In this document: positions 40,903-64,000 of the stretch, in pieces | Layout: each line of letters begins with the position of its first letter | How positions within the stretch are numbered: position 1 is the first letter of the stretch | From: Lepidodermella squamata | Lineage: Eukaryota; Animalia; Gastrotricha | Assembly (NCBI GenBank): GCA_047495785.1 | Contig: JBLDXI010000040.1 | Span: 62,001 to 126,000 of the forward strand | Length of the DNA stretch: 64,000 nucleotides | Direction: 5' to 3' | Notes under the pieces: model-generated | What the model was told of the DNA's origin: nothing | Database searches by the model: none | What the model saw: the letters and a program-made list of their open reading frames with translations, nothing else | Made by a program: the position numbers and the translations under genes

Positions 40903-41059
40903 CAAAAACATAACGCTTATGCATGCAGAGTTTGTGAATAGGGTCCGTATGTGGTCGTATGTTTTTCGTCGTATGCGTAAGTGATTGGTCGTATGCGTAA
41001 GCAAAAAAAAAGATACGGAGTTTGTGCGGAGACCTATAGTCACAGATGAGATTACAAAA

Positions 41060-43030: not shown

Positions 43031-43846
43031 CAGGGTATAATATCGACCGATTTTTTTGTTGAAAAAACCACCCACCGGTATAAACCGGTTTAAACCGGTG
43101 AAAAAAACCGGTTTTTTTTATAAATGCTAAAATCACTGAAATTGACATAGCCAAAGCTCGCTAGCACTTAGTCCTATAGAGATTTGGACTGCACCACGTG
43201 AATCTACGTGAAAAACTGCATAGTTTGACATATCACACGGCCATTTTTCTCACCCGGAAGAAAAATTATTTTTAGTGCAATAAAGCAATAAAAAAATTAA
43301 AAAAGCGCAGTTATCTCCGGAAGTATGATGACTAGTAAAATTCTGAAAACGGATTCTGATCCGCCGTAAAAAGTTACCCCTCCGGGGTTTCTAAGGGGGG
43401 TTTCGAAGACAAAGGAAGCGGGTTTGCCGGTTTCATTTGAAAATTTCAACTTGAAAGGTCTAAAACCGCCTAATTATACCCTTCCGGAAGTAAAACTGAT
43501 TTCACGATAGTTGCCTTACTATGATCGATATTGCCATAAAAATTTGGGATCTAGGCTAGAATTTGCCGCTGAACACGATGGTGACATCGAATCACCCGCA
43601 TCAGGTATCGCATATCGATTATCGATTATTGGTAACTGATCGAGTGATCGATTTTTTAAAATTTAGTCAAATCGATTCTATGTGATACAGTGTAGTCTTT
43701 CTAGAGTATTTCAGCTGTACGGTATTGATCCTGGGGACATAATGACTCTTAGACGACTTCTGGGCATTTGTTATATATGAAAATGTGAGCTTTTTTGCGT
43801 GAAAACACCCCAAAAACAGCTTTTTGAAAAAACCGCGGTTATCCTA
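43031..43846. mobile_element. Copy-specific insertion, hAT-like non-autonomous element
   Basis: Begins CAGGG with subterminal AAACCGG repeats and is absent from the two paralogous upstream regions. Right end approximate; no TSD seen. Confidence 0.55.
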
Positions 43847-44458
43847 AAAAAAGGCCGAGAGAGGGAACAATTATTGATTCTCTATTTGTGCCTTCGGCAA
43901 AAATTACGCCGGAAGCGATAAGCGATTGTCAATTATTGATGCAAATCAAACAGGAAAAAACTGACTATTTAATCATTAAAAAAACCACTCAGAAATCCGT
44001 TTTTCCCCAACGTTTTCCCAATCGAAAAAAATTGCTGCTGAATTAGGAAACAATTATTGATTTCACTAAATTTTCCCCATCCCATTGGGATCTCCGGATG
44101 ACAATTTTTCCAATCCAATCCTGCAAAACAGTGGCAAAATGTTCATATTGGTTAATAAATTATGCCACGTTTTGTTAAAAAAATATTTGGCATGCAAATG
44201 GCTCCAGGAAAAATCTTTTATTCTTGTTGTTTACGAGTATTTGCATAATTAATGAAACGATATCACGCACCATAGCGTATCTTGCAGCGATTTTAACCGG
44301 CGTCATTGTTCGTGCCTAGTAGCAACGCCGGTGCAATCGCCTGTCTGAGTTGATAATAACATTTACGCTTAAATTATGTATTTAATTCGCTTAAATTCGA
44401 ATGGGTGCATCCGACCTGTTGGCATCAGATCGAGCCTGCAAATTGCAACATACTGAAA

Positions 44459-45706
44459 ATGGCGATCAGCGTTTGCATCATCCTTTTTGCTGTGCACTTT
44501 ACAGTGGCGCGGCCATCGGGATTTTTGCAAAATACAAACGATGATATCGATAAGCGGAGCTACACGAAAGAAATATCCGACTACTTCTTCAATAGCGCGT
44601 GTCCTCTCGCGCGCGAGATCGAGCTCGACCTGGAGATTGGGCACAGAGGCCGACTAACCGACCTGCCCATCAACATCTCAATCTATGTGCGTATGCACAG
44701 ATTGGTTGAAGTTGACGATCTTTCTCAGAGGTAAGTCAGAATAGGCTTCGGATAAGGCTATATTTTCTTTATCAGTTTAACAGTTCTCGCGAGCTATTGG
44801 CTCACTTGGTACCTGCCGCCTTCAGGTTGCAAACCAATGAGCACGAACGATGTACCTAGCATGTCGAATGAAACCACGATATATGTACCAAGTGACACTT
44901 CAAGATCGTGGCGACCTGTTGTTGAGCACATGAATGGCATGGATTCGGGTGACATTTTAGCCGGCGAACCCGATTTGCGAATTTTCTACGCCGCATCAGA
45001 GAGTCCTGTCTACGGCTACGTCCGCGTATTCAAACCTATTAAAACGTACTGCTACGGCTTTGACATCCGCAACTTCCCCTACGACAAACTTAATTGTTCG
45101 ATTGAGGTTGAACCTAGGGACAGTGTCTCAGTTCTCAAAATAACAGAGGCCAGTTTCGCAATTGCTAGCGCAGCAAGATTCGTTTCTGATACTGACGTCT
45201 GGGATTCAATACGAGGCTCATCTGCTTCCAATATTTCCCAAAAGGGCAGGTACAGCCATCTTACAATGTCATTTTCCTTGCAACGAAGGTATAACTACTA
45301 TGTCGGCAATATTTTTCTCCCAGTTTTTGCGACTGTAATCTTGCAAATGTGTGCTTTGATTATGAATCCTAAACACCCTGATAGGCCTACTTATTGCATT
45401 ACGGTTGTTATAGCAATATCATTTCTATTGGCTCTGGTTTTCAGCCAGATACCGCGTACGTCCCAAACTGTTTACTTGATCGTTATGATTACTATGAAAG
45501 TGCTCTATTGTGTTCTGATGACGATTTACGCTCTGATTGCTTGCAACATTGCCAAGTCGAAATGGGGCCGGCAGCGAGTTGCTATCGGCAAGTTGCGATT
45601 AACTAAGGTTCGACTTATCGACTTGGCAGTCACTATCTTCTCAATTTTCTCTTTGCTTATCATCGACCTTTTTCTATTTTTGAAAATGAGTGGACAGCTG
45701 GATTAA
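44459..45706 (+). CDS. Divergent Cys-loop channel subunit copy 3, 400 aa
   Basis: Exons 44459-44730 and 44776-45706, same lengths as copy 1, open frame. Cys-loop CYGFDIRNFPYDKLNC. Confidence 0.93.
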
Positions 45707-47611
45707 GAATGATCTACAAGTGATCTACTTGGCTCAGTCCCGGTTATAATTCTCCTTTTGTCTTGACCATTTAGGCCAAATACGCTGACGTTTTTTGACC
45801 TGTCTCTGTCGGATGGTTGTTTCCGTGTTGTTGCATGCGGTTGTGGATTTTTATGATGCAAAAAGAAGCGCTATTTTACTCTTGATATTGATCTTGATAT
45901 TGATACGAATGTTAACAGGCTTGGTAAAAAAGTTTACATTGTGGGATGTTGATGCCGCTTTTAAGACCGATTGGCGAGGAGCCGAACGATATCAAAAACA
46001 AGTTGAAAGTCTCCAGGGTTGCTGAAATACAGGCTTCAACTTCAATTAACAAATGCTCATTTCGAAAAAAACGCGCTCAAAAATTCGAAAGATTTCATTG
46101 CATCAGTTCGCAACACAATTAATTGTAATCTTTTTTTCTTATTCGAGGTCGAAGTTGTCCAGGATAAGTTGAGGTATGGAATCTCGCTAGATATTCAAAC
46201 ATTTTGTTGGAATCAAGCTAGTGTCTCTCTGTGAACCTACAGGCACTTTGGCGACACGTTTGTTTTAAGGTGGATGGGGTCCACGAGATCTTAAAATAGA
46301 AGAATCAACAATCTTCAAGAAAATCTGGCTAAGCAAATTGTTAAATCCGCCAATCGCTTCTTTTCAAGCCGACACTCTATTTGGGATTTTCTAAAAAATA
46401 CGATAAATTCCCTGAACCCCACTTTTCACCTGTTGGCAGTCATATTGCACTTCTTGATAAAATTGGATGAGATTTATTGAGCGATGCGTGCAAATCGAGC
46501 TTACATCATTTACCCGTTTTTGAAGGAAGCTTTAGCTTTTCAATTTTTGCCAAATAAAATGAAGGTTTCAAAAGTACGGAAAAACGTTCAAGAAGAGAAA
46601 CTTTGCTTTTTAGGAAAATGTACGAAATAAATATGGAAAAATCGGCTTCGGCCAATTTCAGAAGTGGAGAGAAGCCTAGAATAATAGAATTGGATCTTCT
46701 ATTCTCAGTTCCAGCTCCATTCAACAGAATACTGTCCTCAGACACACTTTCGCTAATTTGCTTATTTATTACAGTTGATTTAGGCAGTAAAGAGGCCCAT
46801 AATTGTTTCTCTCACCATTAATAAAACTTTAATATTCATTGTTTTTCCTGGCGGAAGGGGTTTATAATGCCGTTTCTTTCGGTGAGTGACGACGCCCATC
46901 GCAATGCACCGTTTTGTGTCTTGCTATCCTGATAACATAGGTTTGGAAGCGACAGGATTTAGCGGCAGATAAGAGAAACGGCACCCCCAAAGATGCTCGA
47001 AAGAGTTGGTGTCCTAAGTGAAACATATACCTATCAAGCAAGATATATTACAAGTTTCCTTTTCTTACTTAGGCCATTTACTATTGCAGGGCGAAGGGCG
47101 ACTAAAACGACCCTTTCTTAATTGCGTCACGGCCAAGAAAATCTGTCAAATAAATTTTCTAGTCGCAAACTAAAACAAAATATATTGCACTGAGTAAGCC
47201 TAAGATGAGCGCATTTCTGTCATTTTTGCTTTTTTCAACTCAATTTCGAGCTGAAATGGAGATTTCGCTTTACAAGTCTAAGTCAAAGTTCGCAAAATAC
47301 TCCTCAGAATAACCGGAAGAATTACGAAAGATGAATTATTAGTTCTCACTTTTCAGCCCTTGTTTTCTATTTCGCAAGGATAACAAAACCGTCTTATCCG
47401 CCTGATGACAAGCGACAAATTGTTTCTAGAAACATTCATTTGAAAATCATATTTGAATCAAAACCTTAGCCCGCGTTAGCTTCTTATCATCGTAAATCGT
47501 AACTACAACCGCAAGAAACATTGCTATTTATATTGTCTACCTACAATCACTTACATAAAACTAGCATTATCGCGCCTCTTCTTTTTGAGAAATTGTTCTA
47601 GCTGCTTGGAG

Positions 47612-50285
47612 ATGGCATCGCCCTACTCGTTCCAATCAATAGCCGACTTCACGGACGTTAAGCCTTTGTTACGTAGCGAGAAACTCCTCAGAAACGCATA
47701 TTCATGCAGACGCAGTGAGCGCTATCCTTATGACTTCGTCATTAAAAAAGCTAATCTGACCAAGCTGCAGAAGGAATTCGACCAAGACTTTGAAACAATT
47801 AGCCGACTTCTTCGCGAAAAAGTAAGGAATCGATCCATTTTCGTAATAGCCATTGAGAACATTTGAAATGAAAATCAGAAATCCTGTTTTGCTGATTATT
47901 GGATGTCATAACGTCTTTTTATCTTGTTTTCAGAATTTGAAAATGCTAACAATTAGCCACCCAAACATTGTCCGAATATTTGGAACGTTCGAAGGTTCGT
48001 ATGTAATGCTCTCACGTAAAATTAATCCTTAAAATTTAATTCAGAAAAATATCCGGGTAGTGACGTTGCTTGTTTTAACCACCTGGTGATGGAGTTTTGC
48101 AGAGGCGGAAGTTTCGAAACTCTGATCAAAGCTGAGGGTGAACCGATTCGCGAATTTATGCTTCGAATTTGGTCTCGCCAGCTCGTCTCGGCTTTGGATT
48201 ATCTACACAAGCAAGACATTGTCCATGGCAACATTAAGCCAAGCAATATCCTACTATCGAAGAATCAAGGCAGGGTGAAACTGGCGGAGATAGGGATAGT
48301 AGAAACCCTTGACACGTAAAGCCATCATATTTAAGACTTTGCATGTATTTTAGCCGTAATTTTCAGAAAATCAAAAGCGATATCTCTGTTGCAAGGAATG
48401 CTCGGCTATTTGCCTCCTGAAGTATGGAACGGAAATGGCAGTAGACCTTTGTCTCGTGCCAGTGATGTCTGGTCGCTGGGTGTTACGCTATACGAACTCG
48501 CGAACTACAAAAGACCGGTTTGACAATGATTTAACGTTGAAATTTGAGCCTAATTTATTTTACATAGTTCGAACCAATGCACACTATCCAGACGTAAGTC
48601 AGATTAACTACTTCACATATTTCCATACGTGCAGTGTGCGGAGGAGGGGTAGGGGAACGGGGGTTACAGTATCCCCATAGTGGGGGCCCATCTCTAGAGG
48701 TCCGGAGGCCCATCTAAAACCAAAAACCACGAGCTTTGTCAGATGAAGTCGAGGCTGAAAATATCCATGCGTAACCCCCACCTCCGCTGCTCACAGGTCG
48801 CAGGATTCAATCCGAAACTACTCAATCTCGATTATTATGCTTTGTTTAGAGAAGAAGCTCAAGAGTTCGAAGAGTCGCGTGGTTATTCAAAATATATCCG
48901 GGACTTTGTAATGACCATGCTCACGAGAAACGCAGAGGTTCGACCGAGCACTGATCAGCTCGTAAAAAATAGCACTCTACTGAACGCATCAGAAAATATG
49001 GAGGTGAGATTTTTAGCCAGAGATCAGCGTGAGTTTGGTTTCCTCCTCTGTTTTTCAGGCGGACTTGCCGCGGACAACCGCAACGCCACAGCCAGATTCA
49101 AAGGCTGTTGAGGTATTGAATTTTAGGGAAGGTCGATGAGTTTATTGTGATTATATTTGTCAGGAGTTATTTGGCTGCGTTGATAACAACGATAAGTTGA
49201 TATTAAGAAAGCTATTGGAGGATGAAAAGCTCGGTCTCAGCTCTAACTGCAAAGACACAGATGGGTGTCCTTTGCTGAGTATTGCTGCTATGAAGGGCTA
49301 CAATGACATTGTGGAGATCCTTCTCGAGCAATTCAACGCCAATGTAGAGGCTACAGATACAGATGACGATACACCTTTGCACAAGGCCGCTGTTTATGGC
49401 TACGTCGATGTTGTGAAAACACTGGCTGGCGAGTTCAACGCTAATGTCGAGGCTACAGATACAGAGGGCGATACACCTTTGCACGACGCAGCCCGGAGAG
49501 GCAAAGTCGAAGCGGTGAAGACACTGGCTGGCGAGTTCAACGCCAATGTCGAGGCTACCAATAAAGATGGCGAGACACCATTGCACATTGCTGCTTCGAA
49601 TGGCCACTTCGAGATCGTGAAGACACTGGCTGGCGAGTTCAACGCTAATGTCGAGGCTCCAGATACAGAGGGGGATACACCTTTGCACATCGCAGCCTGG
49701 AATGGCCGAGTCGAAGCGGTGAAGTCACTGGCTGGCGAGTTCAACGCCAATGTCGAGGCTACCAATAAATGTGGCTGGACACCTTTGCACAGGGCCGCTT
49801 TTTGGGGCTGCGTCGAGGTGGTGAAGACACTGGCCGGCCAGTTCAACGCCAATTTCGAGGCTACAGATGAATATGGCGATACACCTTTGCACATTGCTGC
49901 TTCGAATGGCCACTTCGAGATCGTGAAGACAATGGCTGGCGAGTTCAACGCTAATGTCGAGGCTACAGATACAGAGGGCGATACACCTTTGCACGACGCA
50001 GCCCGGAGAGGCAAAGTCGAAGCGGTGAAGACACTGGCTGGCGAGTTCAACGCCAATGTCGAGGCTACCAATAAAAGAGGCTGGACACCATTAATGTGCG
50101 CAGTAAAACGCGGCAATCACGCAGTAGTCGATACACTGATCAATGAATTTCGAGCAAATGTCAACACGACCTGCAATGAAGGAAGAACTGCTCTGTATTA
50201 CGCTAATAACTCCCACTTCTTGGTTTTTACAGCCGAGAACAAGCGTAAAACAATTGAAATTCTGATGAAAGCGAATGCTAGATAA
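47612..50285 (+). CDS. Pseudokinase-ankyrin repeat protein copy 1, 682 aa
   Basis: Exons 47612-47821, 47934-47994, 48045-48315, 48367-48517, 48568-48593, 48850-49003, 49059-49112, 49164-50285 total 2049 nt. Motifs HPNIV, LVMEFC, HGNIKPSN, KLAEIG, YLPPE, SDVWSLG. About 10 ANK repeats in the last exon. Confidence 0.9.
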
Positions 50286-50289
50286 CTGT

Positions 50290-51130
50290 GCATAAGGAAA
50301 TGTCAAGAGCAAGAAAAAATAGCCTGGCTGAGCATTTGAGACACGCAACGCTGGGTTTTTGAACAAATGGTATTGATACTAGGGCCGAGTTAGCCCTTCG
50401 ATGATCTGCTTTCTCACATCTCTGATGGAAATATCCATTGTACCCGGCGTTTTTCGCAAAAGACACCATGTGTTGACCACAGCGCTGTTCAGCGGCAGTT
50501 CTACGGCAACTTTGAATTCCCACCGTCGCGCAGTGCTCCGAGTACGGGGGGCAAGGCGGGTAAACAAACCCCCCTGACGTTTGAAAATTTCTGAAAAACG
50601 TAAGGGCCCCCCGTTGATTTGCTAATTTTGGGCTCAAAATGGCTCTATTTACCCCCCTCAGAGCTGGACCTAGTCGGATCACTGCCGTCGCGACTTCCGC
50701 AATGCCGGGTGGTAAGAAGCCATCTGGTCTTGTTTATCGATGCCGCATTTGCAGAGATTGTAGTCAATCAACGCTTTTGGAAGTAATCTGGGATGCCCTG
50801 TACGCTTCGAATGGTCCAAGGATTTTTTATTTTGGTGGAAGTTTGAGAGAAGCATGACTTCCCGTCGATCGAAGAACCGAAAAATCATCAAAGTTCCGAG
50901 ATCATCGGTCGCAGCAGCCAGATTGCCACGTTCGAGGCGTCGCTGCAAGAGTTCCTGAGGGTTGCCGTTTCTGTTCTTACGCAAGGTCCCAATAAAATGT
51001 GTGCTTCGTTTTCATAGCTTTCGAGAAAGCAAATAGGACGTAAAATAGTTGTCAGTGAATAAGATATGACCTCGGTGGAGGTGGTGACGCATAAGGCGCA
51101 TGCAAAGCCTGGCTGCAGGGGCGTATCCAG
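50290..51130 (-). mobile_element. Decayed piggyBac transposase fragment
   Basis: HILFTDNYFTSYLL, FIGTLRKNR, IDYNLCKCGIDKQDQMASY, SAVVNTWCLL. Carries stops and frameshifts and is interrupted by a GC-rich insert at ~50530-50672. Confidence 0.88.
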
Positions 51131-51232
51131 GCGGTTGTTTTGGTTGTAAAACAACTACCAAAATGAATTCTGAAAAACCCCTCTCAACAAGAACTTCCCA
51201 ATTTTCGATCATTTGGCTGATCATTCCTTCTC

Positions 51233-51867
51233 CAGATGCGGTTTTAAGGTTCAAATTAAGCAAAAATAAATGACCGACAATAAGTGAAAAGTGGGGTTTG
51301 GCGAATTTTCTGAATTTTCCAGCAAATCGCAAAGAGTGTTTTCACTCGAATTAGGACCATTCTTGGATTCCAAGGTTTTCTGACTCAGTTTTTCTTGAGG
51401 ATTTGAAATTTTCAAATGTCAGACCTCTACGAGGCTCCCATCCGCCTTAAAATACGGAAAACCTCAGAGCAGCTCTGAAAAGTGTTATTGATTCACGTTG
51501 TCGTAGAGACACTATCTTGATCCAAACACAATTTTTGAATATACAGCGAGATTCCTCACCTCAGATTACCCTTAGACCTTAGAAATGTCAACTGTGCATA
51601 AGAAACTAAAATCAGAATTTATTGCGTGGGGAATTTTGAAATGATGCAATAAAAAACTAAATTTTTAAGCTCGTATTTCACTCGTATACTTTGAAGCCCA
51701 TTTTCTCAGCAACCCTGATGAATATCAACCGCTTTCTTATACCGTTCGACTCCTCGTTAATAGATCTTGAGAGTGGCATCAAAATCTCACTATGTCAAAA
51801 ATTTCGCCAAACCCCACTTTTCACTTATTTTCGGTCAAATGCAAAATCCAAATTTTTCAAGCATCTG
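51233..51867. mobile_element. Old inverted-repeat element (CAGATGC...GCATCTG)
   Basis: tgaccgacaataagtgaaaagtggggtttggcgaa (~51271-51305) is inverted at ~51803-51837. Interior is related to 4965-5200 and 45900-46240. Confidence 0.65.
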
Positions 51868-52196
51868 TATGAAACCATACTTAGCGTTTCATGGTTGGTT
51901 TCACAGCCCAGCTATAACCTGCAATGGCTACTTCTGGGAAACATAAATCGCGGGGCACAGGGTTGTAAATATTTCAGTAAATATTGCGTATGAACGGCGA
52001 TTTTCTCGGTATAAAAGGTTATAAGAGCTTCCTTTCGGAGCAATTTTAGGCTATTTCCAGCTCACATTGCTCTTGTGATTGGCATGAGTGATTCAGCCCT
52101 TGAAAATACCCTCGGGCTACGCTTCGATACGCCCTCGGGCATTTTCAGCGGGCCGAAATCTCGTATCTGCCCTCAACACCGTTAAGGATTCCTTAA

Positions 52197-52291
52197 CTCT
52201 GTACTACGCTAAAAACAGCTTCTGCTATGTTACAGCCGAGAACAAGCAGAAAACAATTGACATCCTGAAAAGAGCGAATAACGCTAGATAA
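52197..52291 (+). pseudogene. Orphan 3' end of another pseudokinase-ankyrin copy
   Basis: LYYAKNSFCYVTAENKQKTIDILKRANNAR* matches the C-terminus of copies 2 and 3; upstream is repeat DNA. Confidence 0.85.
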
Positions 52292-53226
52292 CTATATAGA
52301 CTGCTCTCGTCAAACAATTACCAAAATGCTTTCAATTCGATTCTCTGTTTTGATGAATAAAATGAAACGTGCCTAAAAGGATTCTCGCAAAACCGTCTTT
52401 TGAATCTGTTCAAGCGTCGTTTTAAAGCGGTGCGAAGTTCCTACTAACGGCCCGAAGTGACGGTTCTATTGGCGACGAGCAAGTAACTGTGCAATAGAAG
52501 CCAGCTCTCTCAGTGAAACTCCCTGCGATTCCACTGTTCCAGCTCCTTTCATCAGGATAAGGTCCTCGAACACACTCTCGCTTATTCGCATATTTGTCAA
52601 ATTTGATTTAGGCATTAAAAAGTAAAAAGACCCGAACTTTTTGTTCCTACCGTTAATGAAACTTTATTTTTATCGCGGGCAGAAGGGGATTTATAATGCC
52701 GTTCCTTTCGCCGAGTGACGAAGACCAACGCATTGTACCGTTATCCAATGTTATTTTGATAACATAAGGTTGGACAGCGACAGAATTTAGTGGCAGACAG
52801 GAGAAACGATAAGAATCTTTTCTAGCTTATGCAACATAAATTGCACTCCTGGCTTAGTCATTTTTAGAATAACACATGTTCTGAGCCTAAGATAAGTGCA
52901 TTGCTATCATTTTAGCTTTTTCAACTCCTCAGAATTACCGGAGGAGGAGGCGGGTTTCAGCCTTGGAAATTACAGAAGATAAATGGAATAATTCTAACTT
53001 TCCCCATTGATCTTTTCGTTAGATGAATAATAAACACGTCATAGATGGGTAATCGTCTTATGACGAGCGACAGATTTCCGTATCAGTGACGCATGTTGGA
53101 AAGCAGCCTTCCCCCGCACTACCTTCTCATTACCATAATTTTCAGGGAGAAACATTGGCTACCTACTAACCTTTATACATATAGAACCGTCTTCATTTTT
53201 TTAGAAATTGTTTTAGCTGCTTGGAG

Positions 53227-55485
53227 ATGACATCGCCCTACTCGTTTCAATCAATAGCCGAGTTCACGGAAGTTCAACCTTTGCTAGGTAGTGAGAAACT
53301 CCTCAGAGACGCGTATTTATACAGACGCGATGGGTGTTACCCTTTCGATTTCGTAATTAAAAAAGCTAATCTGAGCAAGCTGCAGGCGAAATTCAAGGAA
53401 GACTTTGAAACAATTACCCGACTTCTTCGCGAAAAAGTAAGGAATCTATCCATTCTTGCAATCAGTGAGAACATTGTAAATGGTATTCAGAAATCCAGTG
53501 TTGCTGATAACTAGATGTTATGAATCATTTTATCTTCTTTCCAGCATTTGAAAATGGTAAAAATTAGCCACCCAAACATTGTCCGAGTATTTGGAACGTT
53601 CGAAGGTTCGTATGTAATGCTGTCACGTAAAATTAATCCTTAACATTTAATTTAGAAAAATATCCGGGTAGTTACGTTGCTTGTTTTAACCACTTGGTAA
53701 TGGAGTTTTGCGAGGGCGGAAGTTTCGAAACTCTGATCAAAGCTAAGGGTGAGCCGATTCGCGAAGTTAGGCTTCATAGTTGGTCTCGCCAGCTTGTCTC
53801 GGCTTTGGATTATCTACACAAGCAAGACATTGTCCATGGCAACATTAGGCCGAGCAACATCCTACTATCGAAGAATCAAGGCACCGTGAAATTGGCAGAG
53901 TTAGGAATAATCGAAACCTTTGACACGTAAAGCAATCATGTTTAAGAATTTACTAATATTTTGGCCATAATTTTTCAGAAAATCAAAAACGATATCTCTA
54001 TTGCAAGGAATGCGCGCATATTTTCCTCCTGAAGTTTGGAACGGTGCGCCTTTGTCACGCGCTAGTGATGTCTGGTCGCTTGGTGTTACTCTGTACGAAC
54101 TCACGAACTACAAAATACCAGTTTGACAATCAGTTAACGTTGAAATTCAAGACTAATTTATTTATTTAGTTCGACCCGATGCACACAATCTTGACGTAAG
54201 TCGGATCAACTATCATATATTTTCTAAGGCAATGTGCGGAGAAGGGCTAGGGGTACGGGGGTACAGCATCCCCACGGCGGGGGCCCTCGAGAGGTACAGG
54301 GTCCAGGCGTGAAAACCTTAAAAACTATGAGGGAGGCCCTTCTGTCAGGTAAATTCGAGGCTGAAATTGTCCAACAGTAACCTTCACTTCGGGGATCCGA
54401 CTTTATCCACTGCTCACAGGATTCAATCTAAAACCACTGAATCTCGCTTTGCTTAGACATGAAGCTCAAGAGTTCGACGAGTCGCGTGGTTATTCAAAGC
54501 ATATTCGGGATTTTGTAATGGCCATGCTCACGAGAAACGCTGAGGTTCGGCCGATCACTGATCAGCTTGTAAACGATACCTTTCTACTGAACGCACCAGA
54601 GGATGTCGAGGTGAGATTTTTAGCCAGATGCTAAAGATCAGCGTGAGTTTGGTTTCTTCCGTTTTTCAGGCGGACTTGTCCTCGACCACAACGCCGCAAC
54701 CAGATGCAAAGGCTGTTGAGGTATTGTGATTTAGGTAACGTCGATGAGTTTATTGTGATTATGTTTATCAGGAGTTATTTAAATGCGTGCGGAACAACGA
54801 CAAGTTGAAATTAGTGGAGCTACTGGAGGATAAGAAGCTGGGTCTTAGCTCCAGCTGCAGAGACACAGATGGGTGTCCTTTGCTATGTACTGCTGTTCGC
54901 TCAGGCTACAATGACATTATGTGGATCCTTCTCGAGCAATTAAGCGCCAAAGTCGAGACTAAAGATAAATATGGCGATACACCTTTGCACGACGCAGCCT
55001 GGAAGGGCGATGTCGAAATGGTGAAGACACTGGCCGGCCAGTTCAACGCTAATGTTGAGGCTACCAATAACTGGGGCCGGACACCTTTGCACAAGGCCGC
55101 TTACTACGGCAACGCCGAGATGGTGAAGACGCTGGCTGGCCAGTTCATCGCCAATGTTGAGGTTAATGATAAAGGTGGCGATACACCTTTGCACGACGCA
55201 GCCTGGAATGGCCACGTCAATGTGGTGAAGACACTGGCTGGCCAGTTTAACGCCAATGTCGAGGCTGCCAATAATAAAGGCCACACACCGTTAATCGTCG
55301 CAGCGAATCGCGGCGAACACGCCGTAGTCGATACGCTGATAAATTTATTTCGAGCAAATGTTAACGCGGCCTGCAATGAAGGAAAAACGGCTCTGTATTA
55401 CGCTAAAAACTGCTTCTGGTATGTTACAGCCGAGAACAAGCAGAAAACAATTGACATCCTGATAAAAGCGAATGACGCTAGATAA
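53227..55485 (+). CDS. Pseudokinase-ankyrin repeat protein copy 2, 542 aa
   Basis: Exons 53227-53436, 53545-53605, 53656-53926, 53979-54120, 54170-54195, 54457-54610, 54670-54720, 54772-55485 total 1629 nt. HGNIRPSN, KLAELG, about 6 ANK repeats. Confidence 0.9.
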
Positions 55486-56059
55486 CTATATAGCTTTCAC
55501 TACGAGTACTATGTAACGGGATCGGGATCATTTTATTGGAATTGCCGGGATTGCTTATTAAATTTTCGAAATGTTTAGAATTGTTTCAGTTCTTTATCGT
55601 TAATTTGCTGCCAGCTCAGCGCAGTTATCGAGTTTGGTTTCGTATGATTTTACCCGAGTGATAAGTATTGGAAGGCAGGCAATTTATTTTTTCAAACAGC
55701 TGACAGTATAATATCGAGTAAGGTCAGGGCCATAGGGATAGAAAATTATGAAATCCTGCAAATATGCCTTGATTGTTTTTGTTTCTAAACTTTCTGGATA
55801 GTCTTCGATTTCGGCTTAGTCGTAAAGCCAACGTTTTTTCAAGGATTTGTCTGTCAACGCCAAAATTTGAACTTGGCGTCTCGTGAAACAGCTGCCACGA
55901 TGAACGTGACAATTCTTCAATTGTTTCAATTCGATTCAGTCTTGATGAATAATTCAGTCATTCAGTCTTCTTATCGTGAATGAAGAGGCAAAACAAAAGA
56001 CTTTTTACTTGCCACCTCTAACTTTGAAACAAACGTAAACAAGCTTAAATCCGAGTTAT

Positions 56060-56490
56060 TCAACGTCGCTAACGATATGTAACGTAGCGGGTGGGAAATG
56101 CGCCATCCTGACCCGGGCAGATTCGGGCCTGGGGTCCTGGCTAATCGGTGGAAAAATGACATGTCCCGAAAGCAGCGGCGTAGCGCTTGATCGATGTGGG
56201 TCTGCCACGTTAGTCGCCGGATCAAAGTGAATGCCCAGGACACGGATGGAGGTGACCGCCGGATCCGGGGACCACGATTCAGTTAACGGATAGGTTGAGT
56301 TGGGTAGGCACAGGGCCGAATGCCATGTCTTCGCATTTGCTTGCATTGAATTTTTGGTGCCAGTCGCGGGCCCCGGCAAAGATTCAGTTTATTTCAGGTT
56401 GGGCTGCTTCTTGGGCGGTTTTGAAATTCATACAGGTGGCACTGACGGTTTGGTCATCGGCGTATGCCTCAGTGATGCTGTTGGGCGATG
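56060..56490 (-). mobile_element. LINE RT fragment
   Basis: Minus strand AYADD (~56453-56467), KFNASKC, IRVLGIHFD, RRLTWQTHI. Confidence 0.8.
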
Positions 56491-56930
56491 GCCGGTCGAA
56501 TTTTGTCGGTCGAAGACGCGCCGAGAAACCAGCCATTGTCGCCTCTAACGTTGCTATGGCTAGTCGCTGAATTTCTGTTGCTGCTCAAAACCGCGATTCC
56601 GGAGGAAAAACCGGATTTGCATCGCGACAGCTGCCGGCAAGAGATTTCGACGACCTCATTTTTCGTCTCATTTTGTCATAATATCTTTGTTTTTGCACGT
56701 GAAATTGCTTTTAGGTAAAATAGAGATTTTCGTTGTTTTTGTCGAGACTTTCCTAAGATTCTCGAGGAATGCTTTTTCTGGGGGTTTCTTGGCCGATTCC
56801 AAGTGAAATGCTGCCAAAATTCTTGGTTGTCATAGAGAAATTCATTGTAGCCATAGAGAAATTCAATTTCCCAATGGCAAAATTTACCATACTCCCTTAT
56901 TCCCATCTATTCGCAGCTCTTATTCTCAAC
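56490..56930. repeat. Dispersed repeat; copies at ~61160-61620 and inverted at ~62750-63180 and ~63715-64000
   Basis: Shared blocks caagagatttcgacgac, ttttgcacgtgaaattgct, ccatagagaaatt. Confidence 0.8.
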
Positions 56931-56937
56931 CGAACAT

Positions 56938-57000
56938 GATAGCGTAGTGGTTAGCAGTGATCTCAGAAGATCCATAGTTCGAGCCCGCCTCCATTGGGCT
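56938..57000 (+). repeat. tRNA-derived SINE-like head (copy at ~61620-61682)
   Basis: A-box TAGCGTAGTGG and B-box AGTTCGAGCCC; no cloverleaf. Confidence 0.5.
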
Positions 57001-57575
57001 AGTTTCTTTATTTTGTACTTTTTTTAAGATTAACGATGACGACGAAATAACGGAATCCCGAACTTGTTTCTATTAATAAGTTGGCCTCATATCCTGCATA
57101 TCCGGACTATAATGCAATAACAGATAACCGTCTTATGACAGATTTTCATACCAGTGGCGTATGAAAGAAGCCGTCGCCCACGCCAGCTTCTTATCATCGC
57201 AACGGCAAGAAACATTGCTGCTGATAATTTTTTATACGGTCTATCACTTAGATAGAACCGGCGCTTTTTCATTTTGAGAATGCATCTTTAGCTGATTGGA
57301 GACTACTTCGCCCTACTCGAAGATAAATGGAATACTTCTAACTTTCCACCTTGTTCTTCTCGTAAGATGAATAATAAACACCTCATAGATGGGTAATAGC
57401 AATCGCCTTATGACGAGCGACAAATTTCCGTATCAGTGACGAATGTTGGAGAGCAGCCTTCCCCCGCACTACCTTCTCATTACCATAATTTTCAGAGAGA
57501 AACATTGGCTGCCTACTAACACTTATACATATAGAACCGTCTTCATTTTTTTAGAAATGTTTTAGCTGCTTGGAG

Positions 57576-59838
57576 ATGACTTCGCCCTACTCGTTTCAAT
57601 CAATTGCCGAGTTCACCGAAGTTAAGCCTTTGCTAGGCAGCGAGAAACTCCTCAGAGACGCTTATTTATTCAGTCGCGATGCTTGTTACCCTTACGACTT
57701 CGTAATTAAAAAAGCTAATCTGAGCAAGCTGCAGGCGAAATTCAAGGAAGACTTTGAAACAATTACCCGACTTCTTCGCGAAAAAGTAAGGAATCTATCC
57801 ATTCTTGCAATCAGTGAGAACATTGGAAATGGTATTCAGAAATCCAATGTTGCTGATAACTACCTGGATGTCATAACGAATTTTATCTTCTTTCCAGGAT
57901 TAGAAAATGGTAAAAATTAACCACCCAAACATTGTTCGAGTATTTGGCACGTTCGAAGGTTTGCATGTAATACTATCAAGTCAAACTTATCTCAACGATT
58001 TTGTTCAAAAAGAGGAATACCTAGGTAGTGACGTTGCGTGTTATAAACATTCCATGCATTATTTGGTGATGGAGTTTTGCGGGGGCGGAAGTTTCGAAAC
58101 TCTGATCAAAGCTAGGGGTGATCCGATTCGCGAAGTTAGGCTTCACAGTTGGTCTTGCCAGCTCGTCTCGGCTTTGGATTATCTACACGAGAAAAACATT
58201 GTCCATGGCAACATTAAGCCAAGCAACATCCTACTATCGAAGAATCAAGGCACCGTGAAATTGGCAGAGTTAGGAATAATCGAAACCTTTGACATGTAAA
58301 GCCATCGTATTTAAGATTTTACTTATATTTTGGCCTTAATTTTTCAGAAAATCAAAAACGATATCTCTGCTGCAAGGAATGCGCGGCTATCTACCTCCTG
58401 AAGTATGGGACGGCGCGCCTTTGTCACAAGCTAGTGATGTTTGGTCGCTTGGTGTTACGCTATTCGAACTCGCAAACTACAAAAGACCAGTTTGATAATG
58501 AGTTAACGTTGAAATTCAAGCCTAATTTTTTTTATTTAGTTCGAACCGATGCACACTATCCAGACGTAAGTCGAATTAACTATTAACACATATTTCTATA
58601 GGCTGTGTGCGAAGTACGAAGTGAGGGGTGCTGTTACGATATACGGCATACAGACAAGAAACCCCCCAAAAAATCACAAGAGGGACCCTTTTGTCAGATG
58701 AATTCGAGGCTGAAAATATCCAAGGAAACCCACCGCTTCGAGGATCCTGCATCATCTACTGCTCGAAGCCGATTCAATCTGAAACTATTCAATTTAGAAT
58801 ACTATGATTTGTTTAGACAAGAAGCTCAAATGTTTGACGAGTCTCATGGATATTCAAATTATATCCGGGATTTTGTAATGGCCATGCTTACGAGAAACGC
58901 CAAGGATCGACCGAGTACTGATCAGCTTCTGAAAAATATATTTCTACTGAAAGCACCAGAGGATGTCGAGGTGAGATTTTTAGCCAGAGATCAGCGTGAG
59001 TGTGTTTCCCTCCTCTTTGTTTCTCAGGCGAACTTGTCCACAACCAAAACTCAACCAGATGCAAAGGCTGTTGAGGTATTGTTTTACGTACCGTCAATGA
59101 GTTGATTGTGATTATATTTATCAGGAGTCATTTGATTGTATGGAGAGCAACGATAAGTTGAAATTAATGAAGCTACTGGAGGATAAGAAGCTGGGTCTTA
59201 GCTCCAGCTGCAGAGACACAGATGGGTGTCCTTTGCTATGTACTGCTGTTCGCTCAGGCTACAATGACATTGTGTGGATCCTTCTCGAGAAATTAAGCGC
59301 CAAAGTCGAGACGAAAGATAAATATGGCGATACACCTTTGCACGACGCAGCCTGGAAGGGCGATGTCGAAATGGTGAAGACACTGGCCGGCCAGTTCAAC
59401 GCTAATGTTGAGGCTACCAATAACTGGGGCCGGACACCTTTGCACAAGGCCGCTTACTACGGCAACGCCGAGATGGTGAAGACGCTGGCTGGCCAGTTCA
59501 TCGCCAATGTTGAGGTTAATGATAAAGGTGGCGATACACCTTTGCACGACGCAGCCTGGAATGGCCACGTCAATGTGGTGAAGACACTGGCTGGCCAGTT
59601 TAACGCCAATGTCGAGGCTGCCAATAATAAAGGCCACACACCGTTAATCGTCGCAGCGAATCGCGGCGAACACGCCGTAGTCGATACTGTGATAAATGAA
59701 TTTCGAGCAAATGTTAACGCGGCCTGCAATGAAAGAAAAACGGCTCTGTATTACGCTAAAAACTGCTTCTGGTATGTTAAAGCCGAGAACAAGCAGAAAA
59801 CAATTGACATCCTGATAAAAGCGAATGACGCTAGATAA
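57576..59838 (+). CDS. Pseudokinase-ankyrin copy 3; TAG at the start of exon 2 (pseudogene, or rescued by a shifted acceptor)
   Basis: Exons 57576-57785, 57898(or 57904)-57958, 58013-58295, 58348-58489, 58540-58565, 58817-58970, 59028-59075, 59125-59838. TTG>TAG at 57901-57903. Confidence 0.75.
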
Positions 59839-60329
59839 CTATATAACTTGCACTAGAGTACTATGTAACGGAATCGGGATTTTTTTATTGGAATTGCCGC
59901 GATTGCTTATTAAATTTTCGGAATGTTTAGAATTGTTTCAGTTCTTTATCGTTGATTTGCTGCCAGCTCAGCGCAGTTATCGAGATTGGTAAGGTCAGGG
60001 CCATAGGGATAGAAAATTATGAAACCCTGCAAATATGCCTTGATTGTTTTTGTTTCCAAACTTTCTGGATAGTCTTTGATTTCGGCTTAGTCGCAAGGCC
60101 AGCGTTTTTTCAAGGATTTTTCTGTCAACGCCAAAATTTGAACTTGGCGTCTCGTGAAACAGCTGCCACGATGAACGTGACAATTCTTCAATTGTTTTAA
60201 TTCGATTCAGTCTTGATGTATAATTCAGTCATTCAGTCTTCTCATCGTGAATGAAGAGGCAAAACAAAAGACTTTTTACTTGCCACCTCTAACTTTGAAA
60301 CGGACGTAAACAAGCTTAAATCCGAGTTA

Positions 60330-61160
60330 AGTATTCAACGTCGCTAACGATATATACAAATGTACAAATATCCGAATACTTATACAAAGCATGAGGCAAT
60401 TGCAAACGCGGAAAGAGGTGTGTTTGTATTTGCAAGAGTATGAAATTGAGCATTGAGCATTTAGTTAGGTTTAAAGATAGGCGATGGGGGACCGAGCTGG
60501 CGGGTCCTTTCAGAGTCTTCGATGTCCTCTCGTACGTGGAGGATGGTTGTAACGGCGTTGGCCACGTAGCGGGTCTGACATTTTTGTAAGAACCGGTCAA
60601 GGGATTCGACGTGGATGTGCTGCTTGAGCGCGGTGGTTGCAAGCGGTCACTGCAGCGCGCCCGGAGGGCGGCACGCAAGCAGTCGTTTTCTAGCACTTTG
60701 AGGCGTTTAATTTGTCGCGCTGACATACAGCCAAGGACGATTTTGCCATATGCGAATGGCGCGAATCAGGGAGAAATACACCATTATGACGCAGCGCAGA
60801 TTCGGGCCTGGGGTCCTGGCTAATCGATGGAACAATGACATGATGTCCTGAGAGCAGCGACGTAGCGCTTGATCGATGTGGGTCTGCCACGTTAGTCGCC
60901 GGATCAAAGTGAATGCCCAGGACACGGATGGAGGTGACCGCCGGATCCGGGGACCACGATTCACTTAACGGCTAGGTTGACTTGGGCTGGCACAGGGCGA
61001 ATGCCACGTCTTCGCTTTTGCTTGCATTGCATTTTTGGCGCCAGTCCCCGGCGAAGATTCAGTTTATTTCAGATTGCTGCTTCTTGGCGGTTTAGAAATT
61101 CATACCGGTGGCACTGATTCTGAGGTCATCGGCGTATACCTCAGTGATGCTGTTGGGCGA
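60330..61160 (-). mobile_element. LINE RT core-to-thumb fragment (longer copy of 56060-56490)
   Basis: Minus strand YADD (~61125-61137), RRLTWQTHIDQ, VYFSLIRA, QIKRLKVLENDCLRAAL. Confidence 0.82.
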
Positions 61161-61991
61161 TGGCCGGTCGAATTTTGTCGGTCGAAGACGCGCCGAGAAA
61201 CCAGTCATTGTCGCCTCTAACGTTGCTATGGCTAGTCGCTGAATTTCAGTTGCTGCTCAAAACCGCGATTCCGGAGGAAAAACCGGATCTGCATCGCGAC
61301 AGCTGCCAGCAAGAGATTTCGACGACCTCGTTTTTCGTCTCATTTTGTCATAATATCTTTGCTTTTGCACGTGAAATTGCTGTTAAGTAAAATTGAGATT
61401 TTCGTTGTTTTTGTGACTTCCCTTAGATTTTCGAGAAAATGCATCTGGGGGTTTCGAGGTCAATTTCGAGCAAAATCCTGCCAAAATTTGTGGCAGTTTC
61501 AAGCCATAGAGAAATTCTTGGTTGCCAAAGAGAAATTCATTGTAGCCATTGTAAATTAAATTTCCCAAATTTTACCATAATCCCTTATTCCCATCTATTC
61601 ACAGCTCTTATTCTCAACCGAGTATGTATAGTGGTTGCGCTATCTCAGAAGATCCACAGTTCGAGCTCGCCTCCTTTGGGCTAGTTTCTTTATATTTTAA
61701 TTTTTTAAAAGAATTAACGATGGCGACAAAATGACGGAATCACGAACCTGTTTCTATTTATAAGTTGGACTTTGATCCTGCATAGCCGGACTATAATGCA
61801 ATAACACAAAACCGTCTTATGACCAGATTTTCATACCAGTGGCGTATGAAAGAAGCCGTCGCCCGCGCAAGCTTCTTATCATCGTAACGGCAAGAAACAT
61901 TGCTGCTGATATTGTATGCTGTCTATCACTTACATAGAACCGGCCTTATTGCGCTTTTTCATTTTGAGAATACATTTTTAGCTGCTTGGAG

Positions 61992-62712
61992 ATGACTTCA
62001 CCCTACTCGTTTCAAACAATTGCCGAGTTCACCGAAGTTAAGCCTTTGCTAGGCAGCGAGAAACTCCTCAGAGACGCACATCTATGCAGACGGGATACGT
62101 GCTACCCCTACGACTTCGTAATTAAAAAAGCTAATCTGAGCAAGCTGCAGGCGAAATTCAAGGAAGACTTTGGTACTATTACCCGACTTCTTCGCGAAAA
62201 AGTAAGGAATCTATCCATTCTTGCAATCAGTGAGAACATTGGAAATGGTATTCAGAAATCCAATGTTGCTGATAACCACTTGGATGTCATAACGAATTTT
62301 TATCTTGTTTTCAGGATTTGAAAATGGTAAAAATTAACCACCCAAACATTGTCCGAGTATTTGGCACGTTCGAAGGTTTGCATGTAATACTGTCATGTCA
62401 AACTTATCTCAAAGATTTTGTTCCAAAAGAGGAATACCTAGGCAGTGACGTTGCGTGTTATAAACACTCCATGCAATATTTGGTGATGGAGTTTTGCGGC
62501 GGCGGAAGTTTCGAAACTCTGATCAAAGCTGGGGGTGGGCCGATTCGCGAAGTTAGGCTTCGAAGTTGGTCTCGCCAGCTCGTCTCGGCTTTGCATTATC
62601 TACACAATCAAGGCATAGTCCATGGCAACATCAGGCCGAGCAATATCCTACTGTCGAAGAATCAAGGCACCGTGAAATTGGCTGACTTGGGAATAATCGA
62701 AAACTTTGACAC
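61992..62712 (+). CDS. Pseudokinase(-ankyrin) copy 4, exons 1-3 only within the window
   Basis: Exons 61992-62201, 62315-62375, 62430-62712. HGNIRPSN, KLADLG. Intron 3 is interrupted by repeat DNA from ~62745 to the window end. Confidence 0.8.
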
Positions 62713-64000
62713 GTAAAGCCATCATAATTACGATTTTACATGTACAGGTATTCCTACATACGCATGGTAAAATTTTGCCATTGGGAAATTTGATTTCTCC
62801 ATGGTTACAATGAATTTCTCTATGACAACCAAAATTTTTCTATGACATGAAACTGTCCCAAATTTGGGCAGCATTTTGCTCAGAATTAGCCTCAAAACCC
62901 CCCATGAAACGCAGTTTCTCGATAATTTTAGGAAAGTCACTAAAACAGCGAAAACCTCAATTTTACTTAAAAGCAATTTCACGTGCAAAAACAAAAGACA
63001 AAATGAGGCGAACAACGATGTCGTCGAAATCTCTTGCTGGTAGCCGTCGCGATGCCGATCCGGTTCTCCCTCCGAATTCGCGGTTTTGAACAGCAACGGA
63101 AATTCAGCCACCGGCCATAGCAACGCTAAAGCCGACGACGACTGGTATCTCGGCGAGTCTTCGATCTTCGGCAAAATTGACCCAAATCCATGATTAGTTT
63201 CCGCCGCAACCTGGATACCATTTTGCAGCGAGCGGATGGCTTCTTTTATTGTCAGTCATCCAAACGCCGCGATGTTGACGCATTGATTTCTGTGCGAACC
63301 CAGCTGGCAGGTGACCGATTTGAGTGGCTTCTTCGAAGCAAAGATTTGTTCGTTTCCAGACTCGATCGAACCAAGGCGACGGATAATCTTGGGGCTTGAT
63401 ATCGGCTGTTCCATGAGTCTTGACCACTGATGATTCGGCCAGCCGGAGAGCATGAAGCTTTCGACGACGAATGACGGTTGACCAAAAACCAAGTTGCAAA
63501 CAAGAAAAAAATCGCCGAATGAAAAGTGTTTTTCGCTTTCAAACGAAGAATTGGTTTCGTGAAATTTTAAGTTGGATGTTTTATTTTCTCGAAATTATTA
63601 TCCTGAAATCACCCCTATGTACCAATTGCACCCTTTTGGAAATGGTTTGGCTGCGCCAAACTCGCTCGGGGTTTCAGATCGGGGGGAAATTTCATTTCTC
63701 TATGGCTAGCTATAGAATAATCCTTTATTCCTACATGCGCATGGTACAGTTTTGCCATTGGGAAATTGAATTTATCTATGGCTTGAAACTGCACCAAAGT
63801 TGGGCAGCATTTTGCTCGAAATTGACCTCGAAACCACCCAGAAAAAGCATTTTCTCGAAAATCTTAGGAAAGTCTCAATTTTATTTCAAAGCAATTTCAC
63901 GTGCAAAAATGGAATTGTGACAAAAAGAGGCGTAAACGAGGTTGTCGAAATCTCTTGCGGCAGCCGTCGCAATGATGCAAATCCGTTTTCCCCTACGGAT

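What the first reader, a model, noticed from the sequence alone, without database searches (positions are those of the whole stretch)
47612..62712. Tandem array of pseudokinase-ankyrin genes: candidate diversifying intracellular sensor system
Seen: all four copies have HGN in place of HRD, no GxGxxG loop, and EIG/ELG (DLG in copy 4) in place of DFG, yet keep the beta3 Lys (FVIKK), PPE and DVWSLG. In copies 1-3 the kinase is fused to a single-exon ANK array. Established: HGN occurs in pseudokinases such as JAK JH2 and receptor guanylyl cyclase kinase-homology domains; RIPK4/ANKK1 have this domain order but are HRD/DFG-type kinases; ILK and RNase L have the reverse order. Inference: a lineage-specific family coupling a variable binder to a non-catalytic switch or scaffold, plausibly in innate immunity.
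Basis: partly seen in the sequence, partly recalled or inferred. Interest (0 to 1): 0.8.

Follow-up and report, generated by a model that had tools for sequence, protein, structure and literature searches.

The report
Dead-kinase ankyrin gene array
The stretch holds a tandem row of real, spliced animal genes that each join a catalytically dead-looking protein kinase to a variable run of ankyrin repeats; they belong to a very large family in this genome whose function, including the proposed immune role, is untested.

Summary
Four tandem genes (period 4.35-5.6 kb) each encode an N-terminal kinase domain with HGN for HRD, EIG/ELG/DLG for DFG and no glycine loop, followed by a single-exon ankyrin array.

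The genes have 8 exons and 49-60 nt GT-AG introns, so the apparent frameshifts in the raw ORFs are introns. Copies 1, 2 and 4 read through intact. Copy 3 has a TAG just after its usual exon-2 acceptor. Copy 4 also has an ankyrin exon, beyond the window end, and two more copies follow.

The kinase part is under purifying selection (dN/dS 0.22-0.36; exon indels all multiples of 3). The ankyrin binding face varies fastest.

In 49 sampled paralogues, all dead-site copies form one clade derived from HRD/DFG kinase-ankyrin genes in the same genome. Those active genes score best against GCN2 and NEK1, not RIPK4/ANKK1. No close relative was found in 1.84 billion proteins.

The best-described parallel is the Giardia Nek-ankyrin expansion. 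An immune role is a guess: expression could not be tested.

The scan has already met this family in at least 8 other windows of this genome.

The parts
47612..50285 (+). Copy 1: 8-exon gene, 682 aa, intact. Pseudokinase (HGN, EIG) plus an ANK exon with 8 full 34-aa repeats and caps.
   Evidence: Exons 47612-47821, 47934-47994, 48045-48315, 48367-48517, 48568-48593, 48850-49003, 49059-49112 and 49164-50285. All introns are GT-AG, and there is no internal stop. Pfam Ank E 1.8e-76.
53227..55485 (+). Copy 2: 8-exon gene, 542 aa, intact. Pseudokinase (HGN, ELG) plus an ANK exon with 4 full repeats and caps.
   Evidence: Exons 53227-53436, 53545-53605, 53656-53926, 53979-54120, 54170-54195, 54457-54610, 54670-54720 and 54772-55485. 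All introns are GT-AG, and there is no internal stop. The apparent frameshifts lie in introns.
57576..59838 (+). Copy 3: 8-exon gene, 543 aa only if the acceptor at 57904 is used. With the family's usual acceptor (57898) there is a stop at codon 72.
   Evidence: Exons 57576-57785, 57904-57958, 58013-58295, 58348-58489, 58540-58565, 58817-58970, 59028-59075 and 59125-59838. Intron 2 (54 nt) is also open in frame if retained.
57901..57903 (+). TAG in copy 3 where copies 1, 2 and 4 have TTG. It is both a stop codon and a new AG acceptor.
   Evidence: DNA alignment A1; model test.
61992..64000 (+). Copy 4, 5' part: exons 1-3 (HGN, DLG) and the start of a 1997-nt intron 3 that carries an insertion. 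The gene continues beyond the window to equivalent 66790 (627 aa, intact).
   Evidence: Exons 61992-62201, 62315-62375 and 62430-62712, then 64710-64851, 64902-64927, 65525-65678, 65734-65784 and 65834-66790 in C40 minus 62000 coordinates.
48224..48232 (+). HGN in place of HRD in copy 1. The same motif is at 53835-53843, 58204-58212 and 62621-62629.
   Evidence: alignment.
58264..58275 (+). A-ELG in place of x-DFG in copy 3. Copy 1 has A-EIG (48284-48295), copy 2 A-ELG (53895-53906) and copy 4 A-DLG (62681-62692).
49164..50285 (+). ANK exon of copy 1: 102-nt (34-aa) units. Repeats 2 and 7 are identical in protein, and repeats 3 and 6 nearly so, which points to an internal block duplication.
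58540..58565 (+). 26-nt mini-exon (FEPMHTIQ) of copy 3. The equivalents are 48568-48593 and 54170-54195.
   Evidence: AG and GTAAGT are conserved in all paralogues, and the frame closes only with this exon included.

Best explanation
These are real genes for soluble proteins of about 540-720 residues. Each has an N-terminal protein-kinase fold that has lost the residues needed for phosphotransfer, a short Thr/Pro-rich linker, and a C-terminal ankyrin solenoid of variable length.

They form the HGN/ELG branch of a very large kinase-ankyrin family in this genome. That family arose from catalytically competent, GCN2/NEK1-like kinase-ankyrin genes, lost the catalytic Asp once, and then kept expanding by tandem duplication and unequal crossing-over.

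The most likely mode of action is non-catalytic (inferred). The dead kinase domain is kept as a binding or allosteric module, plausibly pairing with active paralogues as JAK JH2, HER3, KSR and STRAD do. The ankyrin array decides which partner is bound. Its binding face and repeat number change fast, so the partners are diverse or fast-evolving.

Shown: gene structure, intactness, selective constraint, family structure and motif states. Inferred: lack of catalysis, the scaffold or allosteric role, and partner diversity. Not shown: expression, any ligand, or any immune role.
For: - Gene models: 8 exons, and all 14 splice sites are GT-AG in each of 5 full copies on this contig and in 2 on contig C29. 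None has an internal stop, except the conditional TAG in copy 3.
- Frame kept: all 6 distinct indel events in the 948 aligned columns of the kinase-part exons are multiples of 3. In 355 columns of short introns, 17 of 20 are not.
- Purifying selection on the kinase part: dN/dS 0.22-0.36 for in-window pairs, with bootstrap upper bounds of 0.55 or less.
- The degenerate motifs are themselves conserved. HGN is found in 10 sampled copies, with one further close copy reading HGS. Of those 11 copies, 8 have ELG at the DFG position, 2 have EIG and 1 has DLG.
- Tree of 49 catalytic-core exons: all 33 tips without HRD form one clade (SH-like support 0.94). The HGN tips form a subclade of 10 (0.76).
- HRD/DFG paralogues have a GxGxFG loop, a VVK lysine and a downstream ANK exon.
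- ANK: a 34-aa unit with an invariant framework. Entropy peaks at positions 1-3, 5, 10, 13, 14, 16 and 34. dN/dS is 1.9 at the a-priori DARPin binding positions against 0.5 elsewhere.
- Copy-number and array differences between two colinear regions that are 91-96% identical.
Against:
- The closest pair (copy 1 vs C29a) has dN/dS 1.18 (0.6-2.9), compatible with relaxed constraint.
- Copy 3 carries a probable premature stop. C29b looks truncated under the mapped model. One copy is a fragment. So some members are dying.
- The ANK dN/dS comes from non-independent repeat pairs and is not a formal test.
- Loss of catalysis is predicted from motifs only. HER3 and JAK2 JH2 keep weak activity with the same Asp-to-Asn change. 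Copy 4 keeps an Asp at the DFG position.
- The whole kinase domain could not be folded, because a joined exon model could not be submitted.
Confidence: 0.65

Rival explanations
1. Diversifying intracellular immune sensor. The ANK arrays recognise pathogen or foreign molecules, and the pseudokinase acts as the signalling switch or as a decoy.
For: - Large, tandem, fast-turning-over family.
- Hypervariable ANK binding face with dN/dS above 1.
- Repeat-number variation between near-allelic copies.
- Notes from other windows report members with an active kinase, a dead kinase and ANK together, as in plant tandem-kinase resistance proteins (not checked here).
Against: - No death, TIR, CARD, NACHT or other immune signalling domain. 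The protein is only kinase plus ANK.
- No expression or induction data.
- The same evolutionary signature fits any recognition system with fast-evolving partners, for example transposon control, gamete or self recognition, or cytoskeletal targeting as proposed for the Giardia Neks (PMC3218828).
Confidence: 0.15
2. Atypical but active kinases. Phosphotransfer is kept despite HGN/ELG, as with the weak activity of HER3 or JAK2 JH2, and the ANK array acts as a substrate-recruiting domain.
For: - The beta3 Lys, a candidate alphaC Glu, the catalytic-loop Lys/Arg and Asn, PPE and the subdomain IX Asp and XI Arg are all retained.
- Glu at the DFG position could still bind metal, and copy 4 has Asp there.
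- The active-site neighbourhood is strongly conserved among copies.
Against: - Three lesions coincide: no Gly in the loop (copy 1 has none at all), the catalytic base Asp replaced by Asn, and the DFG Asp replaced by Glu.
- The sister branch also changes the catalytic-loop Lys to Thr (HRNITTSN), which fits relaxation of catalysis in the whole clade.
Confidence: 0.12
3. Young, functionless duplicates on their way to becoming pseudogenes. They are intact only because they are recent.
For: - Exon and intron identity are similar for the closest pairs. dN/dS is 1.18 for copy 1 vs C29a.
- Copy 3 has a TAG, there is a fragment copy, C29b is truncated, and transposon fragments lie between the genes.
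- Other windows report many damaged copies.
Against: - At dS 0.25-0.33 between copies, seven genes of 1.6-2.2 kb keep open frames and all their splice sites.
- Exon indels are only multiples of 3.
- dN/dS is significantly below 1 for 6 of the 7 tested pairs.
- The dead-site state is old and monophyletic, with about 33 sampled descendants.
Confidence: 0.08

Closest known systems
Giardia lamblia Nek kinase expansion (Manning et al. 2011, PMC3218828)
   Same: - An N-terminal kinase domain is followed by a variable ankyrin array (1-26 repeats in Giardia).
- Most members lack catalytic residues.
- The family is large, with fast duplication and loss.
- The kinase type is near Nek.
   Different: - This is a different lineage: an animal genome with short spliced introns.
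- The repeats start TPLH with a 34-aa unit, not Giardia's TALM class.
- The dead members here form one clade sharing a single Asp-to-Asn change.
- No homology beyond the general kinase and ANK level was shown, so this is a parallel, not membership. [quoted passage not shown]
RIPK4 / ANKK1 (TKL group)
   Same: Domain order: kinase at the N-terminus, ankyrin repeats at the C-terminus.
   Different: - Those are HRD/DFG active kinases of the RIPK family.
- Here no RIPK or other TKL chain is among the nearest solved structures. RAF is about 20 bits below GCN2 and NEK1.
- The catalytic residues are lost here.
HGN-type pseudokinase domains (JAK JH2, receptor guanylyl cyclase kinase-homology domain); the motif comparison is from general knowledge
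   Same: - His-Gly-Asn stands in place of His-Arg-Asp.
- The domain is kept under constraint as a regulatory, non-catalytic or weakly catalytic module.
- JAK appears among the weak PDB hits (7t6f, E 1e-11).
   Different: - No FERM/SH2, cyclase or second kinase domain in these genes.
- The kinase lineage is different.
- HGN arose here independently, within a local HRN clade.
Designed ankyrin repeat proteins (DARPins) and natural variable ANK binders
   Same: - An invariant framework.
- Variability concentrated at the beta-turn and first-helix positions (2, 3, 5, 13, 14 and the last residue).
   Different: - The unit is 34 aa rather than 33.
- The variation is natural and comes with unit duplication and shuffling.
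- The array is fused to a pseudokinase.
Plant tandem-kinase/pseudokinase resistance proteins and pseudokinase decoys (ZED1/RKS1 type); comparison from general knowledge
   Same: Dead kinase domains are kept in fast-evolving families, where they act as baits or switches.
   Different: - No NLR partner or immune phenotype is known here.
- The genes in this window have a single kinase domain.

Membership tests
Eukaryotic protein kinase superfamily (Pfam PF00069) | Significant match to the Pkinase profile above the gathering score | tested here: met
   Exon with the catalytic loop: 73.1 and 76.9 bits against a cut-off of 31.7. Subdomains II-XI are recognisable across the exons.
Pseudokinase (predicted) | Loss of at least one of beta3 Lys, catalytic Asp (HRD) and metal-binding Asp (DFG) | tested here: met
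   The HRD Asp is Asn in all four copies. The DFG Asp is Glu in copies 1-3, while copy 4 keeps Asp. The Lys is kept and the Gly loop is lost.
Pseudokinase (predicted) | No phosphotransfer activity in vitro | not testable with these tools
   Needs a recombinant protein assay.
RIPK4/ANKK1 (RIPK family, TKL group) | Kinase domain closest to RIPK/TKL kinases | tested here: not met
   The best PDB matches of the pseudokinase exon are GCN2, LKB1, JAK and ULK3. Those of two active paralogues are GCN2 then NEK1. No RIPK is in the best 60.
RIPK4/ANKK1 (RIPK family, TKL group) | Kinase at the N-terminus, ANK repeats at the C-terminus | tested here: met
NEK family | Kinase domain groups with NEKs rather than with other families | tested here: inconclusive
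   - Active paralogues carry HRDIKPxNIFL...GDFG, and NEK1 is the second-best solved match (67.8 and 69.7 bits).
- GCN2 scores slightly higher (74.8 and 75.6 bits).
- Only about 100-residue exon pieces could be searched, and no kinome-wide tree was made.
Giardia Nek-ankyrin proteins | TALM-type ankyrin repeats after the kinase domain | tested here: not met
   The repeats here begin (T/S)PL(H/L/M/I) and none has TALM. The resemblance is one of architecture and evolutionary mode only.
Ankyrin repeat proteins (PF00023/PF12796) | Repeated ANK units above the gathering score | tested here: met
   Ank E 5.5e-34 (copy 3), 6.1e-34 (copy 2) and 1.8e-76 (copy 1). The period is 102 nt.

The most novel reading that the evidence does not exclude
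A small invertebrate (probably a gastrotrich) has built a germline-encoded, diversifying intracellular recognition system out of a dead NEK/GCN2-like kinase switch and a natural DARPin-like ankyrin binder. It did so in parallel with Giardia's Nek-ankyrin expansion and by analogy with plant pseudokinase and tandem-kinase immune receptors. The dead-kinase members would work with active paralogues of the same family.
Probability: 0.2. Interest if true: 0.85.

Novelty: new variant of a known kind. Interest (0 to 1): 0.55.

Why it matters
Kinase-then-ankyrin proteins and pseudokinase expansions are both known. However, a family of dozens to more than 100 kinase-ankyrin genes in an animal does not appear in the literature I could search. 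The genome paper for the likely species (Lepidodermella squamata) mentions neither kinases nor ankyrins.

In this family a single ancient loss of the catalytic Asp was followed by continued expansion under constraint. That is a natural case of a dead enzyme fold being reused many times with exchangeable binders.

It would give a tractable system for asking what pseudokinase domains are kept for. It also offers a second, independent instance of the Giardia Nek-ankyrin design.

Tried and rejected
1. Reading the mechanical ORFs as exons suggested frameshifts in copies 1 and 2. Paralogue DNA alignments showed these are 50-60 nt introns and two mini-exons, so 'mostly broken copies' was rejected for this array.
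2. A 30-32 nt mini-intron and other acceptor choices for exon 6 were tried by hand and rejected, because they give stops. Only the 8-exon model closes the frame in all copies.
3. The big representative search with the catalytic exon had its top ranks filled by unrelated multi-kinase proteins from a plant, an oomycete and Euglena. None of those checked has ANK. The only family-like hit is P0040, a 189-aa active fragment from another organism (47% identity; at most 62% to this genome).
4. The word search with the copy-1 ANK exon found only generic ankyrin proteins at 49% identity or less. It gave no relatives and no taxonomy.
5. The ESM Atlas feature search returned generic kinase fragments.
6. 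An SL1 RNA test for a nematode origin was uninformative.
The census therefore rests on 50 loci.
9. The spliced proteins were never joined for any search or fold. Every search was done exon by exon by reference, so no structure prediction of the whole kinase domain was made.
Full report
**What is there**

The window is G000:C40:62001-126000 of a 121 Mb, 151-contig genome. Direct-repeat analysis finds a unit repeated four times between 47.6 and 62.8 kb, with spacings of 5.6, 4.35 and 4.4 kb. Inside each unit is a 102-nt sub-repeat.

Pfam places a protein kinase domain on the exon that carries the catalytic loop (E 3e-20 and 2e-21). It places ankyrin repeats on the last exon (E 1e-34 to 1e-76).
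- FVIK(K), the beta3 Lys.
- HGN for HRD.
- EIG, ELG, ELG and DLG for DFG in copies 1 to 4.
- PPE and DVWSLG.
- LL(G/R)SEKLLR(D/N)A where active relatives have LGRGGFGSA.

**Gene structure**

The raw ORFs suggested frameshifts in copies 1 and 2. DNA alignments of the paralogues show stretches with conserved GT and AG ends that tolerate indels of any length. These are introns of 49-60 nt.

The model that closes the frame has 8 exons. It includes a 26-nt exon (FEPMHTIQ, the stretch after subdomain IX) and a 48-54-nt linker exon. When copy 3's boundaries are mapped onto the other copies, nearly every boundary lands on AG/GT.

Final models:
- Copy 1: 47612-50285, 682 aa.
- Copy 2: 53227-55485, 542 aa.
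- Copy 3: 57576-59838, 543 aa.
- Copy 4: 61992 to window-equivalent 66790, 627 aa.
- A fifth full gene at equivalent 82172-84949, 718 aa.
- An exon-1 + ANK fragment at ~76186-77045.

None has an internal stop, with one exception. In copy 3 the codon after the usual exon-2 acceptor is TAG (57901-57903; TTG in the others). The same change creates an AG 6 nt downstream that would keep the frame. Which acceptor is used cannot be told without RNA.

All database searches were made exon by exon by reference. The joined translations were used only inside scripts, for frame checks and codon alignments.

**Are the genes alive?**

Seven models were compared: five on C40 and two on C29.
- In 948 aligned columns of the kinase-part exons there are 6 distinct indel events, all multiples of 3.
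- In 355 columns of short introns there are 20 events, of which 17 are not multiples of 3.
- dN/dS of the kinase part is 0.22-0.36 for pairs inside the window, with bootstrap upper limits of 0.55 or less, at dS 0.26-0.33.
- The degenerate catalytic loop and its surroundings (IVHGNI[KR]PSNILLSKNQGTVKLAELGI) are nearly invariant across the 11 sampled members of this branch.

So the dead site is conserved, not decaying.

Against this, the closest pair (copy 1 and C29a, 95% identical) has dN/dS 1.18 (0.6-2.9). Copy 3 has the TAG. C29b looks truncated under the mapped model, which I did not curate. One copy is a fragment. This is a birth-and-death family with some members dying.

**The family**

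The catalytic exon finds at least 150 places in the genome, a number that includes ordinary kinases. I read 50 of the best loci. They fall into four types:
- HGN-IKPSN / ELG: C40, C29 and C11.
- HRN-IKPSN / ELG: C17.
- HRN-ITTSN / DLG: C34, C36, C78 and C4, about 20 sampled.
- Canonical HRDIKPxNIF / DFG genes.

Nearly all, including the canonical ones, have an ankyrin exon 0.5-1.5 kb downstream on the same strand. The canonical ones also have a normal GxGxFG loop and the family's characteristic N-terminus and C-lobe.

In a tree of 49 catalytic-core pieces (about 88 aa, midpoint-rooted), all 33 tips without HRD form one clade (SH-like support 0.94). The HGN tips form a subclade of 10 (0.76). 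The simplest reading is a single Asp-to-Asn loss in an active kinase-ankyrin ancestor, followed by continued expansion. Later changes were Arg to Gly and Asp to Glu in this branch, and Lys to Thr in the sister branch.

**Kinase type**

Two canonical paralogues score best against GCN2 (75.6 and 74.8 bits) and NEK1 (69.7 and 67.8 bits). Everything else is at 63 bits or less, and no RIPK is listed. The pseudokinase exon itself gives weak hits to GCN2, LKB1, JAK and ULK3.

The RIPK4/ANKK1 likeness is therefore one of domain order only. NEK membership is plausible but not settled.

**Ankyrin arrays**

The unit is 34 aa, with an almost fixed framework (TPLH.AA..GH.E.VKTLAGQFNANVEA). Entropy peaks at positions 1-3, 5, 10, 13, 14, 16 and 34.

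With the positions fixed in advance (the DARPin randomised positions), dN/dS is 1.9, against 0.5 for the rest. With data-chosen positions it is 1.5 against 0.34. The 351 repeat pairs are not independent, so this is indicative only.

Full-repeat number is 4 (copies 2 and 3) and 8 (copy 1), with more than 20 on C17. Copy 1 contains an internal block duplication, and C29a has two identical neighbouring units.

**Copy-number change**

The upstream flank and the array are colinear with C29:3.068-3.088 Mb on the other strand:
- 95.9% identity over the flank plus the kinase part of copy 1.
- 91-94% over the copy 2 region.
- The ANK arrays do not align at 90% or more.
- C29 has three genes where C40 has five plus a fragment.

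This is either a diverged second haplotype or a recent segmental duplication. Read depth would decide.

**Relatives elsewhere**

An exhaustive phmmer search of the catalytic exon against 1.84 billion representatives gave no close relative. The top ranks are multi-kinase proteins with summed scores, and none of those checked has ANK.

The only family-like hit is P0040, a 189-aa active kinase fragment at 47% identity with the family's N-terminal signature. It comes from another organism: it is at most 62% identical to anything in this genome, and its source is Logan run SRR21279729.

The ANK exon finds only generic ankyrin proteins.

**Known parallels**

Manning et al. (PMC3218828) describe 198 Giardia Neks. 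About 70% lack catalytic residues, and 67% have an N-terminal kinase domain followed by 1-26 ankyrin repeats. They state that this association is not seen in other species. The present family is an independent parallel with a different repeat class (TPLH, not TALM).

**Context from the scan**

After I had reached the NEK/Giardia comparison, the scan's notes showed that at least 8 other windows of this genome hold members of the same family. Some are reported with an active and a dead kinase domain in one gene.

One search does list several same-strand kinase-exon hits 1.2-2.1 kb apart, for example on C42, C2, C8, C7, C32 and C24. That fits those reports, but I could not fetch these loci.

The notes also propose the gastrotrich Lepidodermella squamata as the source organism. 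The published assembly has 122 Mb, 157 contigs, N50 3.9 Mb, GC 43% and heterozygosity 2.99% (PMC11660948). This fits G000's size, contig number and largest contigs. That is a match of statistics, not of sequence. The paper mentions neither kinases nor ankyrins.

**Verdict**

It is wrong about the RIPK-type comparison. It is unsupported on immunity.

Noticed in passing
window 50679-51332 (-): Fragments of a piggyBac-type transposase (Pfam DDE_Tnp_1_7, E 2.8e-12 and 1.8e-4) lie just downstream of copy 1's stop codon. They account for part of the longer 5.6 kb period between copies 1 and 2.
   Followed up: partly
window 52197-52307: An orphan 111-nt piece is 90-91% identical to the 3' end of the ANK exons of copies 2 and 3 (55391-55501, 59744-59854). 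It looks like a relic of a lost copy between copies 1 and 2.
   Followed up: no
window 62713-64000 and on to equivalent 64709: Intron 3 of copy 4 is 1997 nt instead of ~52 nt. The insertion holds an internal direct repeat (62833-62938 ~ 63769-63874, 83%) and ORFs with no Pfam match. It is probably a non-autonomous element.
   Followed up: partly
window 43841-48709 vs G000:C29:3.083-3.088 Mb (-): The 386 kb contig C40 is colinear with part of the 3.9 Mb contig C29 at 91-96% identity, but with a different gene number in the array. It may be an unpurged second haplotype or a segmental duplication.
   Followed up: partly
C40:138186-139045 (window-equivalent 76186-77045, beyond the window): A fragment copy: the first ~45 codons of exon 1 lie next to an ANK exon, in different frames. 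It is a deletion derivative lacking most of the kinase domain.
   Followed up: no
window 55718-57139 vs 59989-61823: The intergenic stretches after copies 2 and 3 are 95-97% identical. They carry minus-strand ORFs without a Pfam match (55971-56379, 60316-60964). This may be a repeat element duplicated together with the unit.
   Followed up: partly
window 41000-46000: The upstream flank has many 76-98% matches across the genome (for example query 2032-2841 on C4, C11, C46 and C42).
   Followed up: no
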